In this document: one piece after another, positions 35,327-44,115 of the stretch
Numbering within the stretch: the first letter of the stretch is position 1
How the letters are laid out: each line of letters begins with the position of its first letter
Assembly (NCBI GenBank): GCA_002269645.1
Contig: NIVC01002392.1
Coordinates: 1 to 64,000, forward strand
DNA from: Macrostomum lignano
Lineage: Eukaryota
Length of the DNA stretch: 64,000 nucleotides
Direction of reading: 5' to 3'
Translations under genes and position numbers: made by a program
The notes under the pieces: model-generated
What the model saw: only the letters and a program-made list of their open reading frames with translations
Told to the model about the DNA's origin: nothing
The model's database searches: none

Positions 35327-38300
35327 CTACAAAACTTCTCGCTTCATTGAAGAATAGAAAAAGCTGTTTTCCTCGTAGCAAATTTGTTGCTGCTGCAGTT
35401 GTTGCTGTTGCAATTGTTGCTGCTGTTGCTGCTGCTGCTGCTGCGCCAAGTGGCTCTGCGCTGGCGCGAACGAATTCCCGGACCACTGTCCGGGACTGTC
35501 CTGTCCGCTGTCCGGACTCGGAGTGAGGAATCCGACCTGCGGCTGCTGCTGCTGCTTGACGGGGCCGCCTTGATAGTAGCCGGTCAGCGCCGTCTGGTGC
35601 GGCGGCAGCGGCGGCGGCTGCTTAGGCAGTTGCTGCTGCATCTGCGGCGGTGAGTCCTCCAGGCCCGTGTGCGACGGTGGGGTCGGGTACTGGTGCGGCG
35701 GGTAGTGCTGCTGCGCCTGCGGCAGAGATGTCGGGTTAGAGAGCGTTGTCGTCATCATCGATGCAGAGGGGGCGCGTGTGCACCCTGGCGCACTTTGAGC
35801 ACCATTACTGTACATTCCGCCAACTCCTCTGAGCAGGCATACAAGCACACTTCACTGAGCCTGGGGGTTGGCCTTCAAGGGCATTAATTTCACGAGCTCC
35901 AAATTAATGTGACTGCACTTGGAATCGAACCTGAGATGCTGGCTACGGCGATCCAAGAGGCAACTCACGCCTATGCAGAAGCTGAAAAATGGGGAAAGAA
36001 AATTCCCTAAGAAACTAATGCTTTTCCCAGCCCCAAGGACCCATGCAGATTCCAAAAACAGTGTCAGACAAATCTAATCGCCTTGTCCAAAAATAATAGA
36101 ATGGAAAATTGAAATTATGTGTTCTCAGCTGCATGTTCAGTATTAGATTCGTCAGTTGCGCCATTGCAAGTACTGAAAACAATTGCGTAACAAGAGCAGG
36201 CATCAATTGCAAAGTTTAGAGCATAAATTTAAGGGCGTTATATAATGCTGTACATTATTAGATAGAAATTTTGGCAGACAACTCAAATGTACATATTTAT
36301 TGAGATCTATTGTGATTAAGGGATTGAGAAACAATGAACAGACTATGTACATTCATAAAGTAGAACATGCCTCTTATCACAAGTTTGCTAACACGCAGAC
36401 TTCCTTTGAAAATAAAGTTGCAGTCAATTGAAACAATTACCCTCAGTACTCAAATCAGTTCTCTGGCCTCGCGATGCCAAACTTTCGACGCACACATGAA
36501 GAGAATCGTATCTGGTGCTGCATCCTCTGCTTCCGCAAAGCCGATCGCGTTATTTCAGCTGCTCAGGCAGAACTCATCGAGCAATTTATCCTGTCAGAAT
36601 TCTGTCATGCCTACATCCGTAATACTCTGCCAGGAGGCATGTGCAGCTGCTGCATCAAGAAATTGCAGTCACAGACGTCACCTGTACCGCAAGAACTGCC
36701 TGCTCGACTGCCATACCTTCAAATTGTTGCAGATTTGGAGGTTTTGCCACAACTCACACGTGAGCATCCGCACTGCTCCTGCTGTATCTGCCAGGTAGTT
36801 TCCAGCCCATCAAACAAGCGGGTGGCGGTCTGGCACCCATACATGTCTGACAGCAGCCGGGCCAACCATAAATTGCCCCAAGGACGACCTGCAGAAACAA
36901 CTCGAAGCCAGGACAGAGACTCGGAGAAGCGCTGCACTAGGTGCCACTCACTTGTGGGCAAAGGCCTAAGGCACGAGTGCAGCGTCTCCAGCAAGTTGCA
37001 GTACCTGCGCACGCTCAGCCCTACATCAAAAGAGCACATCGCTCATGACGTGATGCGTGAAAAGCTAAGAGCAGCAGCAGCATCAGGACATGGATCAACG
37101 GCTTCTATTTCCAGCGCCACCGGTGGCCCACCAATGCAGCTGAGGCATGCAAGTGATTCAAATGAGCAGAGAGCGCTGAGGACCGAGACACTAGTAACGT
37201 TAAAGACATCTCTCAATCTGAGTGACCGGCAGACAAACATGGCAGCCACAATTATCAGGCAGGCGGAGGGCAGTCGTAAGGCCGTGCAACCCGGACTGCG
37301 GGCAGCTCTGGCAGCCGCAGGCAGCATCGCGGAGAGTTTTTTTGAGATGCGGCAGCTCAAATTCACTCAAAGTCCTCAGGTGGCAGCTTTACTGATACCA
37401 CAAGATGTTCCGTCATATGCCCCGATCTGCAGGGACTGCTGAGCTTCATTTGCTCAAAGCGAGGATTTAGTGAGTTCGATGTGAGATTGAAGCTGGGGAT
37501 GGACGGAGGTGGTGGCTCGCTAAAAATCTGCCTTAGTGTCGCCCCAGTACTGCCTACCGAACCACAGGCAGAGTCCACACCTAAGAAGCTGAGCAGGGAG
37601 TCGCGAATAAGCAACTTTGGCGTAAAAAAACTGTTTATCATCGCGATTGCTGAGGATGTCCAGGAGAACTATGCAAATGTGCGAGCACTTCTAGATGAGC
37701 TAGACTTGACATCGATTAAGTTCACAGTCGCTTGCGACTTCAAGCTAGCCAACATCCTGTGTGGCCTTCAAAGTCATGCCGCAGCTCATCCTTGTCTCTA
37801 CTGTGAGGGGCAGGCGCCGTGGCAAGTTGCCGGTTCCATAAGAACCCTTGGATCCATTCGTCGGATGGCCACGGCATTCGAGGCTGCTGGTAGCTGCCAG
37901 CGACTGGCAAGAAACTACGCAAGCTGTGTCAGACAGCCTCTTCTCCCTGGGGCTGATTCTACGCCAATGCTGGACCTCGTGCCACCACCAGAGCTGCACA
38001 TCATGCTTGGTGTGACCAACAAACTGCTCGATCAGCTGAACTCAGCTTGAGGCGACGACAAGGCATACAAGTGGGCGCATTCAGCTGGAATCTGTCGCGA
38101 GCAGTACCACGGCGGGTGTCTGGAAGGCCCTGCGTGTGTCAGATTGCTGCTTAAAGCTCAAGAGCTCAAGAGCAACCTGCCATCAAGGCTCCAGGGCTAT
38201 GCGTCTGCTCTCATGGCATTCGATGCTGTTCGCCAAGCATGCTTTGGGCAACAGCTGATGAGCGACTTTTGCCAGAAGATTGCCCAGCTGGAATCCTGCT

Positions 38301-44115: not shown

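What the first reader, a model, noticed from the sequence alone, without database searches (positions are those of the whole stretch)
35327..44115. Miniature Notch receptor: 7 EGF repeats and only 2 LNRs
Seen: exon junctions fall inside EGF6 (FSG|SRC) and EGF7 (GFQ|GRHC), and intron 1 is almost pure tandem repeat, leaving no obvious room for more EGFs. Only two LNR modules precede the NOD-like region, yet RAM (TWYP), ANK and both PEST degrons are retained. Known: canonical Notch has 29-36 EGF and 3 LNR; nematode GLP-1/LIN-12 have 10/13 EGF and 3 LNR; the three LNRs shield the S2 site. Inference: altered ligand specificity or a lower activation threshold.
Basis: partly seen in the sequence, partly recalled or inferred. 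Interest (0 to 1): 0.75.

Follow-up and report, generated by a model that had tools for sequence, protein, structure and literature searches.

The report
Compact Notch receptor gene, flatworm
This is a real, intact and evolutionarily maintained Notch receptor gene of the flatworm Macrostomum lignano whose outer part is cut down to seven EGF modules and two of the usual three LNR safety-catch modules, a natural 'minimal Notch' that is already in the public annotation but has not been described.

Summary
On the minus strand, 44115-35327, seven exons encode a 1065-aa type I membrane protein. It has a signal peptide, 7 EGF repeats, a cysteine-free linker, 2 LNRs, an HD domain, a TM segment, a RAM motif (TWYP), ANK repeats and a C-terminal LTPSPDS degron.

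My model is identical to GenBank PAA58285.1, "hypothetical protein BOX15_Mlig012765g1" of Macrostomum lignano, whose annotation was built from RNA-seq. No further EGF or LNR coding sequence lies anywhere in the 64 kb. A divergently oriented GPCR gene begins about 5.8 kb upstream.

A second locus (g2) has the same seven exons. dN/dS between the copies is 0.29 overall, 0.04 in the ICD, and about 0.9 in the linker that replaces the missing LNR.

What I add:
- The missing module is LNR-A. The two LNRs are LNR-B and LNR-C, and the plug residues L1482/F1484 of the A-B linker are N/A here.
- The predicted NRR matches solved human NRR structures (Foldseek E 2.5e-13).
- The seven EGFs align collinearly with canonical EGF8-14, firmly for EGF8-11 only.
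- The layout is not unique. An unidentified animal has a collinear 7-EGF/2-LNR Notch, and fish notchl lacks LNR-A and all EGFs.

Altered threshold or ligand specificity is untested. Whether M. lignano also has a long Notch was not determined.

The parts
44055..44115 (-). Exon 1: ATG at 44115 and signal peptide ([20 protein letters not shown]...). Phase-1 donor G|GTGAGT.
   Evidence: The translation equals the N-terminus of P0001. The same exon is found at paralogous locus L006 10001-10061 at 95% identity.
43247..44054 (-). Intron 1, 92% tandem repeat (17-mer and 16-mer arrays).
42485..43246 (-). Exon 2: mature N-terminus, EGF1-5 and the first part of EGF6.
   Evidence: six EGF HMM domains, E 2e-8 to 2e-11.
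42258..42388 (-). Exon 3: end of EGF6 and most of EGF7.
41665..41676 (-). Start of exon 4: last four residues of EGF7 (GRHC).
41584..41664 (-). Cysteine-free linker (aa 323-349, [27 protein letters not shown]) where LNR-A would be. It keeps only the DPW of the LNR-A/B linker.
   Evidence: PDB alignments. pLDDT is below 50 for the first 21 residues of the exon-4 model. dN/dS is about 0.94 against paralogue g2.
41479..41583 (-). LNR module 1, the homologue of canonical LNR-B (aa 350-384).
41359..41460 (-). LNR module 2, the homologue of canonical LNR-C (aa 391-424).
40993..41358 (-). Heterodimerisation (HD) domain, about aa 425-546. It has the conserved Cys pair (aa 488/496) and a short loop with no furin (S1) motif. 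The presumed S2 region lies around the VVL strand at aa 525-527.
   Evidence: AlphaFold model with pLDDT above 90 over most of the domain. Foldseek matches NOTCH1/2/3 NRR structures. C170/C178 are invariant in alignment A1. The location of S2 is inference.
40909..40992 (-). Transmembrane helix (aa 547-574), followed by RRKR.
   Evidence: Helix 229-256 of the exon-4 model and the sequence itself.
40873..40881 (-). RAM WxP motif (W-Y-P of TWYPPGF).
   Evidence: W266 and P268 are nearly invariant or invariant in alignment A1.
39852..40259 (-). Exon 5: spacer and first ANK repeats.
   Evidence: aa 702-888 align with canonical ANK positions, 184 bits.
39231..39659 (-). Exon 6: remaining ANK repeats and a poly-Pro/Gln tract.
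35327..35716 (-). Exon 7: P/Q/S-rich C-terminal tail with the LTPSPDS degron-like motif (about 35527-35507), a poly-Q run and the stop codon.
35965..38934 (.). TIR DNA transposon inserted in the last intron. It is not part of the receptor and is absent from paralogue g2.

Best explanation
The locus is a functional, transcribed Notch receptor gene of Macrostomum lignano (Mlig012765.g1) with a drastically shortened ectodomain.

Shown:
- Seven exons encode a signal peptide, 7 EGFs, an unstructured linker, LNR-B, LNR-C, HD, TM, RAM, ANK and a PEST-like tail.
- The module that is absent is LNR-A. The hydrophobic plug residues of the LNR-A/B linker are absent with it.
- There is no furin (S1) loop.
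- The EGF block aligns collinearly with canonical EGF8-14. The equivalents of EGF8, EGF10 and EGF10-11 are individually recognisable.

Inferred mechanism, the standard one:
- A DSL ligand on a neighbouring cell binds the EGF8-12-like segment.
- Endocytic pulling peels LNR-B/C off the HD domain and exposes the S2 site to an ADAM protease.
- Gamma-secretase cuts at the conserved G-V in the TM segment.
- The RAM-ANK intracellular domain enters the nucleus, binds CSL, and is turned over through the C-terminal phosphodegron.

Because LNR-A and the plug are missing, autoinhibition must rest on LNR-B/C alone. A lower force threshold or more basal signalling is therefore plausible, but it has not been shown.
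For: - Gene model. It is identical to GenBank PAA58285.1. That annotation was derived from a genome-guided RNA-seq transcriptome with experimentally defined gene boundaries (PMC5730564).
- Domains. Pfam gives EGF x7, LNR x2 and ANK.
- No hidden modules. There are no other EGF or LNR modules in the 64 kb window, nor in the 10 kb upstream of the second locus. The upstream flank holds a divergent GPCR gene from 49920.
- Second locus. Paralogue g2 has the same seven exons at 92-98% nucleotide identity and a syntenic upstream region.
- Selection between g1 and g2. dN/dS is 0.29 overall, 0.33 in the EGFs, 0.26 in the LNRs, 0.04-0.05 in TM-RAM-ANK, and 0.94 in the linker.
- LNR identity. The two LNRs align with LNR-B and LNR-C of human NOTCH1/2/3, including the DPW motif, and with positions 1485-1608 of a 104-sequence full-length Notch HMM.
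- NRR fold. The AlphaFold model has pLDDT above 90 across LNR-B, LNR-C and HD, and the pre-LNR linker is disordered. Foldseek top hits are all Notch NRR crystal structures, E 2.5e-13 to 1e-9, TM-score (target-normalised) 0.6-0.68.
- EGF mapping. Residues 33-324 align as one stretch with HMM positions 301-569, which is EGF8-14 (184 bits). Taken alone, EGF1 hits EGF8, EGF3 hits EGF10, and EGF3-4 hits EGF10-11.
- Plug. L1482 and F1484 are the plug residues of the human NRR (PMC3145759). By the DPW register they correspond to N and A here.
Against: - No full-length cDNA or long-read transcript was seen directly. Transcription rests on how the public annotation was made.
- No ligand, cleavage or signalling data exist.
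- Pfam NOD/NODP models do not hit, so the HD is recognisable only by structure prediction and by two conserved cysteines.
- The equivalents of EGF5-7 are ambiguous when scored singly; their best hits are EGF22-30.
- The EGF12-equivalent has lost the Ca-binding consensus, so the canonical rigid EGF11-12 ligand site may not be preserved.
- The protein ends in ...KREVL, not in the A(I/V)(Y/F)I ending seen in the other protostome-type Notch sequences retrieved.
- Whether this is the animal's main or only Notch is unknown.
Confidence: 0.75

Rival explanations
1. It is a specialised side-copy. M. lignano also has a conventional long Notch (many EGFs, three LNRs). The short form is then a derived paralogue with a restricted, modulatory or cis-inhibitory role, not the main receptor.
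For: In another, unidentified animal the 7-EGF/2-LNR gene P0083 coexists within its clade with a closely related longer form, P0064, that has extra EGFs and LNR-A. Fish carry the EGF-less notchl alongside normal Notch genes. Planarians are reported to have several Notch genes, only some of them classical (PMC10970066). My protein searches could not have shown a long paralogue: hits were limited to about 0.6-1.75 times the query length, and the long-query search was swamped by vertebrate sequences.
Against: An exhaustive search with the NRR-TM-RAM exon found only the M. lignano copies below E 1e-30 and nothing else above about 96 bits. However, a divergent long paralogue would look like any other animal's Notch in that list. 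No M. lignano protein other than the Mlig012765 family appeared in any hit list.
Confidence: 0.4
2. It is a leaky or ligand-independent receptor. Without LNR-A and the hydrophobic plug the S2 site is poorly protected, so the protein signals constitutively or through endosomal activation, and the short EGF stalk serves mainly for regulation.
For: LNR-A is missing. The linker positions equivalent to L1482/F1484, which fill the void over strand beta5 in human NOTCH1, are N/A here. In g2 even DPW has become DHW. The linker evolves neutrally.
Against: LNR-B, LNR-C and the HD are under purifying selection and are predicted to pack as in autoinhibited NRRs. [quoted passage not shown] EGFs with O-fucose and O-glucose consensus sites are retained (read from the sequence).
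Confidence: 0.15
3. The short layout is an annotation or assembly artefact. The true gene would have more EGF exons further upstream or in an unassembled gap, and the 'signal peptide exon' would be spurious.
For: The introns are packed with tandem repeats that are hard to assemble. No full-length cDNA was inspected.
Against: The signal-peptide exon splices in phase directly onto EGF1. There are no N runs in the window. No EGF signal lies in the 20 kb upstream or in any intron. Another gene occupies the upstream flank. A second contig shows the identical structure. The annotation is transcript-based. A third copy (g3) and an older independent UniProt model (P0251) have the same N-terminus.
Confidence: 0.06
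4. It is a decaying duplicate (pseudogene) left over from the recent genome duplication.
For: M. lignano DV1 carries large recent duplications. Copy g3 is truncated with a frameshifted tail. A transposon sits in the last intron of g1.
Against: g1 and g2 both have intact 1065/1069-aa reading frames. dN/dS is 0.29 overall and 0.04 in the ICD. All splice sites are canonical. The transposon is intronic.
Confidence: 0.03

Closest known systems
Canonical Notch receptors (Drosophila Notch, human NOTCH1-4)
   Same: The order of parts is the same: signal peptide, EGF array, LNRs, HD, TM, RAM WxP, ANK, C-terminal degron. The NRR fold matches the solved NOTCH1/2/3 NRRs. The ANK region aligns over its whole length. 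The EGFs align with EGF8-14, which includes the ligand-binding EGF8-12 segment.
   Different: It has 7 EGFs instead of 29-36. LNR-A and the plug residues of the A-B linker are absent. There is no S1 furin loop. The NOD/NODP Pfam models do not hit. Only 2 of the 7 EGFs keep a Ca-binding consensus.
C. elegans GLP-1 and LIN-12
   Same: These are the classic short Notch receptors. They show that a much reduced EGF array can support DSL-dependent signalling (established knowledge; 10 EGFs in Caenorhabditis is the published lower bound in PMC2770060).
   Different: They have 10 or 13 EGFs and three LNRs. The M. lignano protein has fewer of both. No close sequence relationship was seen.
P0083, a single-exon Notch gene on Logan contig SRR33927515_3560 (organism not identified)
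   Same: It has the same layout: signal peptide, 7 EGFs, a cysteine-free linker ending in NPW, LNR-B, LNR-C, HD, TM, RAM and ANK. It is collinear with the M. lignano protein over 926 aa at 31% identity. Its EGFs map to canonical EGF7-13.
   Different: It comes from a different, AT-rich, intron-poor genome. It keeps cbEGF consensus in 4 EGFs and a weak NODP hit. A near relative (P0064) has the longer form with LNR-A, which suggests an independent internal deletion rather than shared ancestry of the short layout.
Fish notchl (e.g. Menidia menidia KAM9724402.1; Lepisosteus XP_069055075.1)
   Same: A natural Notch-type protein that starts after the signal peptide at the DPW linker and has only LNR-B and LNR-C before the HD and TM.
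   Different: It has no EGF repeats at all and a reduced ANK region, and it is not a close relative by sequence. Its function is uncharacterised as far as I know.
Monosiga brevicollis 'Notch-like' gene (Gazave et al. 2009)
   Same: It is reported as signal peptide, 1 EGF, 2 LNR, TM and 3 ANK, another minimal EGF/LNR/ANK combination (PMC2770060).
   Different: According to that paper it has very weak similarity to true Notch. The M. lignano protein is unambiguously Notch in its NRR, RAM and ANK.

Membership tests
Notch receptor family | Type I membrane protein with an N-terminal signal peptide and a single TM helix followed by a basic stop-transfer sequence | tested here: met
   The sequence [20 protein letters not shown]... 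is read directly; no signal-peptide predictor was run. The TM helix is predicted at aa 547-574 and is followed by RRKR.
Notch receptor family | Tandem EGF-like repeats in the ectodomain (29-36 in canonical members; 10 is the published minimum) | tested here: met
   EGF repeats are present: Pfam EGF x7, E 1e-42. The number lies below the published range of 10-36 (PMC2770060).
Notch receptor family | Three LNR modules (A, B, C) forming the NRR with the HD domain | tested here: not met
   Only two LNRs are found (Pfam; own HMM). They correspond to LNR-B and LNR-C. The LNR-A position is a cysteine-free, disordered linker.
Notch receptor family | HD (NOD/NODP) domain packed under the LNRs (autoinhibited NRR fold) | tested here: met
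   There is no Pfam NOD/NODP hit. However, the AlphaFold model has pLDDT above 90 and Foldseek matches the NOTCH1/2/3 NRR structures at E 2.5e-13. This is a prediction, not a solved structure.
Notch receptor family | RAM region with a PhiWPhiP motif shortly after the TM segment | tested here: met
   TWYP at aa 583-586. W and P are (near-)invariant columns in alignment A1.
Notch receptor family | Notch-type ankyrin domain | tested here: met
   Pfam ANK families hit. Residues 702-888 align with positions 1909-2094 of the full-length Notch HMM at 184 bits.
Notch receptor family | C-terminal PEST region with a phosphodegron | tested here: inconclusive
   A P/Q/S-rich tail with FLTPSPDS...SPGQWSG resembles the conserved LTPSPESP...WS motif. 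This is motif inspection only.
Notch receptor family | Ligand-binding cbEGF11-12 pair with an O-fucose Thr in EGF12 | tested here: inconclusive
   EGF4 (about EGF11) keeps DVDEC and the N/Y Ca-binding consensus. EGF5 (about EGF12 by collinearity) keeps the C2-x4-T-C3 fucose site but not the Ca-binding consensus. The assignment of EGF5-7 is ambiguous.
Notch receptor family | Ligand-dependent S2/S3 proteolysis and CSL-dependent transcription | not testable with these tools
   This needs cell-based or in vivo assays.
S1 (furin)-processed heterodimeric Notch (vertebrate type) | RxxR furin site in a long loop between HD-N and HD-C | tested here: not met
   The loop between strands is short ([11 protein letters not shown]) and has no RxxR. 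The model shows a compact HD.

The most novel reading that the evidence does not exclude
The short receptor may be M. lignano's principal or only Notch. It may also belong to a recurrent, so far undescribed class of 'core' Notch receptors, made of an EGF8-14-like ligand-binding block joined directly to an LNR-B/C NRR. That would show that about seven EGFs and two LNRs, without the LNR-A/B plug, are enough for regulated, ligand-dependent signalling in an animal.
Probability: 0.25. Interest if true: 0.75.

Novelty: new variant of a known kind. Interest (0 to 1): 0.55.

Why it matters
Work on how Notch senses force, and the design of synthetic Notch receptors, both turn on how much of the ectodomain and NRR is really needed. 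Natural receptors below the nematode minimum of 10 EGFs and 3 LNRs are not in the surveys I could read.

This gene shows that evolution has kept, under purifying selection, a receptor that retains roughly the ligand-binding EGF block but has discarded EGF1-7, the Abruptex-region EGFs, LNR-A and the hydrophobic plug.

M. lignano has RNAi and transgenesis. The question of whether a two-LNR NRR is still autoinhibited and ligand-gated is therefore directly testable, both in the animal and in heterologous reporter assays.

If a long Notch also exists in this species, the finding shrinks to an interesting derived paralogue.

Tried and rejected
- My first guess for the last exon's acceptor (…ctgctcag|A at about 35848) did not fit any donor phase. 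The annotated protein showed that the true acceptor is at 35716.
- My regex and home-made LNR HMM for counting LNRs across homologues were contaminated by EGF matches and gave unreliable counts. I used Pfam and the xPWxxC linker context instead.
- Looking for other M. lignano or flatworm Notch proteins failed three ways:
  - The tool returns only hits of about 0.6-1.75 times the query length.
  - The NRR-ICD query was swamped by generic ankyrin proteins.
  - The long query P0240 was swamped by vertebrate Notch.
- Cluster look-ups did not reveal the source organisms of the LNR-A-less proteins P0023, P0145/P0240, P0165/P0179 and P0083; all are unnamed ENA or Logan contigs.
- Literature and supplement searches for Mlig012765, or for Notch architecture in Macrostomum, found nothing.
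- Single-EGF assignment to canonical positions worked only for EGF1 and EGF3 alone and for the EGF3-4 pair. EGF5-7 remain ambiguous.
- The ORFs of the intronic transposon and the downstream 463-aa gene gave no Pfam hit even at E<=1.
- I considered a cryptic, degenerate LNR-A in the linker and rejected it. The linker has no cysteines, low pLDDT and neutral dN/dS.
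Full report
**What is there**

The window is the first 64 kb of GenBank contig NIVC01002392.1 of the Macrostomum lignano assembly Mlig_3_7 (GCA_002269645.1), in the same coordinates.

On the minus strand I reconstructed seven exons by hand from splice sites and reading frames:
- 44115-44055
- 43246-42485
- 42388-42258
- 41676-40660
- 40259-39852
- 39659-39231
- 35716-35327

All have GT/AG junctions with matching phases. The 1065-aa product is identical to database protein P0001, which is PAA58285.1, 'hypothetical protein BOX15_Mlig012765g1'.

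The GenBank annotation of this assembly is not ab initio. It was made from a genome-guided RNA-seq transcriptome (StringTie/TACO plus a de novo assembly). Gene boundaries were set from trans-splicing and poly(A) reads (PMC5730564). This is indirect but real evidence that the locus is transcribed with this structure.

**Checking the observation**

- Pfam finds seven EGF stretches, two LNR stretches and ankyrin repeats, and no NOD/NODP.
- Intron 1 is 92% tandem repeat and intron 3 is 94% (CTGT)n.
- RAM (TWYP), the ANK domain and a C-terminal FLTPSPDS...SPGQWSG motif in a P/Q/S-rich tail are present.

**Is the short ectodomain real or a truncated model?**

Five lines of evidence say it is real.

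1. The first exon encodes a typical signal peptide and splices in phase directly onto the residues just before EGF1.
2. A regex scan and an EGF HMM built from 119 Notch EGFs, run on all six frames of the 64 kb, hit only exons 2 and 3. The next best hit is a 13-residue fragment at E=0.56. An LNR HMM hits only exon 4.
3. The upstream flank is taken by another gene. A rhodopsin-type GPCR on the opposite strand has exons at about 49920-50369 and 60949-61434.
4. A second locus, Mlig012765.g2 on contig NIVC01003806.1, has the same seven exons at 92-98% nucleotide identity. Its 10-kb upstream region is syntenic and also lacks EGF or LNR coding sequence.
   - A third, truncated copy (g3) and an older independent UniProt model (P0251) share the same N-terminus.
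5. Between g1 and g2, dN/dS is 0.29 overall, 0.33 in the EGFs, 0.26 in the LNRs, 0.56 in the HD and 0.04-0.05 in TM-RAM-ANK. Both copies are therefore maintained as coding genes.

**Which LNR is missing?**

Sequence search against PDB chains aligns the two modules with LNR-B and LNR-C of human NOTCH1, 2 and 3. The alignment starts at the conserved DPW of the LNR-A/B linker (AAADPWADC versus NDPWKNC).

A profile built from 104 full-length Notch proteins places residues 342-466 on positions 1485-1608, again LNR-B plus LNR-C.

Where LNR-A should be there are 27 residues without a single cysteine ([27 protein letters not shown]). In the AlphaFold model the first 21 residues of exon 4 have pLDDT below 50. 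Between the two gene copies this stretch evolves at dN/dS of about 0.94, from small counts of 6 non-synonymous against 2 synonymous changes. It is a spacer, not a degenerate LNR.

In human NOTCH1 the A-B linker supplies L1482 and F1484, which fill the hydrophobic void next to strand beta5 that carries the S2 site (PMC3145759). By the DPW register these positions are N and A in the flatworm protein. In g2 even DPW has become DHW.

**Is the rest of the NRR intact?**

I aligned exon 4 with 56 Notch proteins. All twelve LNR-B/C cysteines, the Ca-binding D/G/D positions, the two HD cysteines and the W..P of RAM are (nearly) invariant columns.

AlphaFold2 with this alignment gives mean pLDDT 75.9, and above 90 over LNR-B, LNR-C and most of the HD. 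The order of secondary-structure elements is strand, helix, strands, helix, strand, then the TM helix.

The first 14 Foldseek matches in the PDB are all Notch NRR crystal structures: 3L95, 3ETO, 7ABV, 5CZV, 6XSW, 4ZLP, 2OO4 and 3I08. E-values reach 2.5e-13, target-normalised TM-score is 0.6-0.68, and rmsd is about 3 A over about 200 columns. Nothing else scores below E=0.02.

The loop where vertebrate receptors carry the furin S1 site is short and has no RxxR.

**Which EGFs were kept?**

The full-length Notch profile aligns residues 33-324 as one collinear stretch with profile positions 301-569. Using a NOTCH1 sequence with human-like numbering as a ruler, that is EGF8 to EGF14 (184 bits).

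Scored one at a time:
- EGF1 picks EGF8 (shared C-x-C-x-NGW-x-G).
- EGF3 picks EGF10 (shared ICTCPxGYTG).
- EGF1-3 picks EGF8-10, and EGF3-4 picks EGF10-11.
- EGF2 and EGF5-7 pick other positions.

I take the EGF8-11 correspondence as reasonably supported. EGF12-14 is the collinear default only.

Reading the sequence:
- Four EGFs (1, 4, 5, 7) keep the O-fucose consensus C2-x4-(S/T)-C3.
- Two (2, 6) keep the O-glucose consensus C1-x-S-x-(P/A)-C2.
- Only EGF2 and EGF4 keep a calcium-binding consensus. Pfam EGF_CA hits EGF4 alone.

The EGF11-12-type ligand site may therefore be altered.

**How it most likely works**

Every element needed for the canonical route is present:
- EGFs of the ligand-binding segment.
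- An LNR-capped HD.
- A TM segment with the conserved G-V followed by basic residues.
- RAM, ANK and a TPxxS-type degron.

The most likely mechanism is the standard one: ligand pull, S2 cleavage, gamma-secretase cleavage, and a nuclear ICD-CSL complex. These steps are inferred, not shown.

The special point is that autoinhibition must be achieved by LNR-B/C alone. According to PMC3145759, LNR-A itself makes few contacts with the HD. [quoted passage not shown]

A lower activation force or higher basal activity is thus a reasonable hypothesis, and no more than that.

**Comparison with what is known**

The survey of Gazave et al. gives 10 (Caenorhabditis) to 36 EGFs and three LNRs for Notch. It mentions only a doubtful Monosiga 'Notch-like' gene with 1 EGF and 2 LNRs (PMC2770060). 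A 2024 review says only that flatworm Notch architecture is well conserved and that some Dugesia Notch genes are non-classical (PMC10970066). I found nothing on Macrostomum Notch.

The layout is nevertheless not unique in sequence databases.
- Among 46 retrieved Notch proteins with the xPWxxC linker, LNR-A is missing or degenerate in the M. lignano family, P0023, P0032, P0083 and P0145/P0240. A relative of P0032, P0258, found in a later search, shows the same junction. Pfam counts two LNRs in each one I tested.
- P0083 is a single-exon gene on a gene-dense 6.6-kb contig from an unidentified organism (Logan SRR33927515). It has a signal peptide, seven EGFs (about EGF7-13), a cysteine-free linker ending in NPW, and LNR-B/C. 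It is collinear with the flatworm protein over 926 residues at 31% identity.
- A close relative of P0083, P0064, carries additional EGFs and LNR-A. That argues for an independent internal deletion in that lineage, and shows that short and long forms can exist in related genomes.
- Fish notchl proteins start at DPW and have LNR-B/C but no EGFs.
- An exhaustive search of 1.84 billion representative proteins with the NRR-TM-RAM exon found only the M. lignano copies below E 1e-30. All other hits (291 at E<=0.001) are weak, and the best of them cover mostly the LNRs. The HD of this receptor therefore has no close relative on record.

**Limits**

- I did not see a cDNA.
- I could not determine whether M. 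lignano has another, conventional Notch. The protein search tool only returns hits of about 0.6-1.75 times the query length, and the long-query search was filled by vertebrate sequences.
- The structural statements rest on a prediction.
- The source organisms of the other LNR-A-less proteins are unknown.

**Verdict**

This is a genuine, selectively maintained Notch receptor with seven EGFs (an EGF8-14-like block) and an NRR that lacks LNR-A and the hydrophobic plug.

It is a new variant of a known kind. It is already present in public annotation as a hypothetical protein, and an older automatic model is named Notch in UniProt. It has at least one architectural twin elsewhere.

The functional reading (threshold, specificity) is open and testable. 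Interest is moderate to fairly high for Notch mechanism and evolution. It would be higher if this proves to be the animal's only Notch.

Noticed in passing
window 35965-38934: A 2970-bp DNA transposon with 128-nt terminal inverted repeats (97% complementary) lies in the last intron of the Notch gene. It is absent from the paralogous locus, whose intron is only 628 bp. Its + strand ORFs (36474-38533) are split over frames and have no Pfam hit, so the superfamily is not identified.
   Followed up: partly
window about 49920-50369 and 60949-61434 (+ strand): A rhodopsin-family GPCR gene lies divergent to the Notch gene. The two exons found (7tm_1 positions 1-54 and 83-184) are separated by more than 10 kb that is full of minisatellites.
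   Followed up: partly
window 32549-34037 (+ strand): An annotated 463-aa gene lies convergent with the Notch 3' end. It contains a long poly-Gly run and has no Pfam hit.
   Followed up: no
window 1053-3139, 10035-12121 and 16273-17835: A direct repeat of about 2.1 kb is present twice at about 100% identity, 8982 bp apart. A third partial copy is 91-98% identical. It could be the LTRs of a retroelement or a recent 9-kb tandem duplication.
   Followed up: no
window 40369-40637, 41695-42238, 43271-44022, 45202-45574, 46176-46435 and elsewhere: The density of tandem repeats and minisatellites in introns and intergenic DNA is extreme. Examples are (CTGT)137, a 17-mer x36, a 39-mer x6.7, a 23-mer x16 and a 33-mer x8. 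Many create long spurious ORFs on both strands.
   Followed up: partly
L007 469-4320 (Logan SRR33927515 contig): A single-exon Notch gene (P0083) in a very gene-dense contig of an unidentified organism has the same 7-EGF/2-LNR layout. A close relative (P0064) has extra EGFs and LNR-A.
   Followed up: partly
L006 10001-16755 (M. lignano contig NIVC01003806.1): Paralogue Mlig012765.g2 differs from g1 by a DPW-to-DHW change in the LNR-A/B linker remnant and by a longer poly-Q tail. A 331-aa ANK-repeat gene lies just downstream on the opposite strand.
   Followed up: partly
proteins P0261 and P0275 (fish notchl): These fish Notch-like proteins consist of a signal peptide, a DPW linker, LNR-B/C, HD, TM and a reduced ANK region, with no EGF repeats. 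They are automatically named NOTCH1 or NOTCH3 in several species.
   Followed up: no
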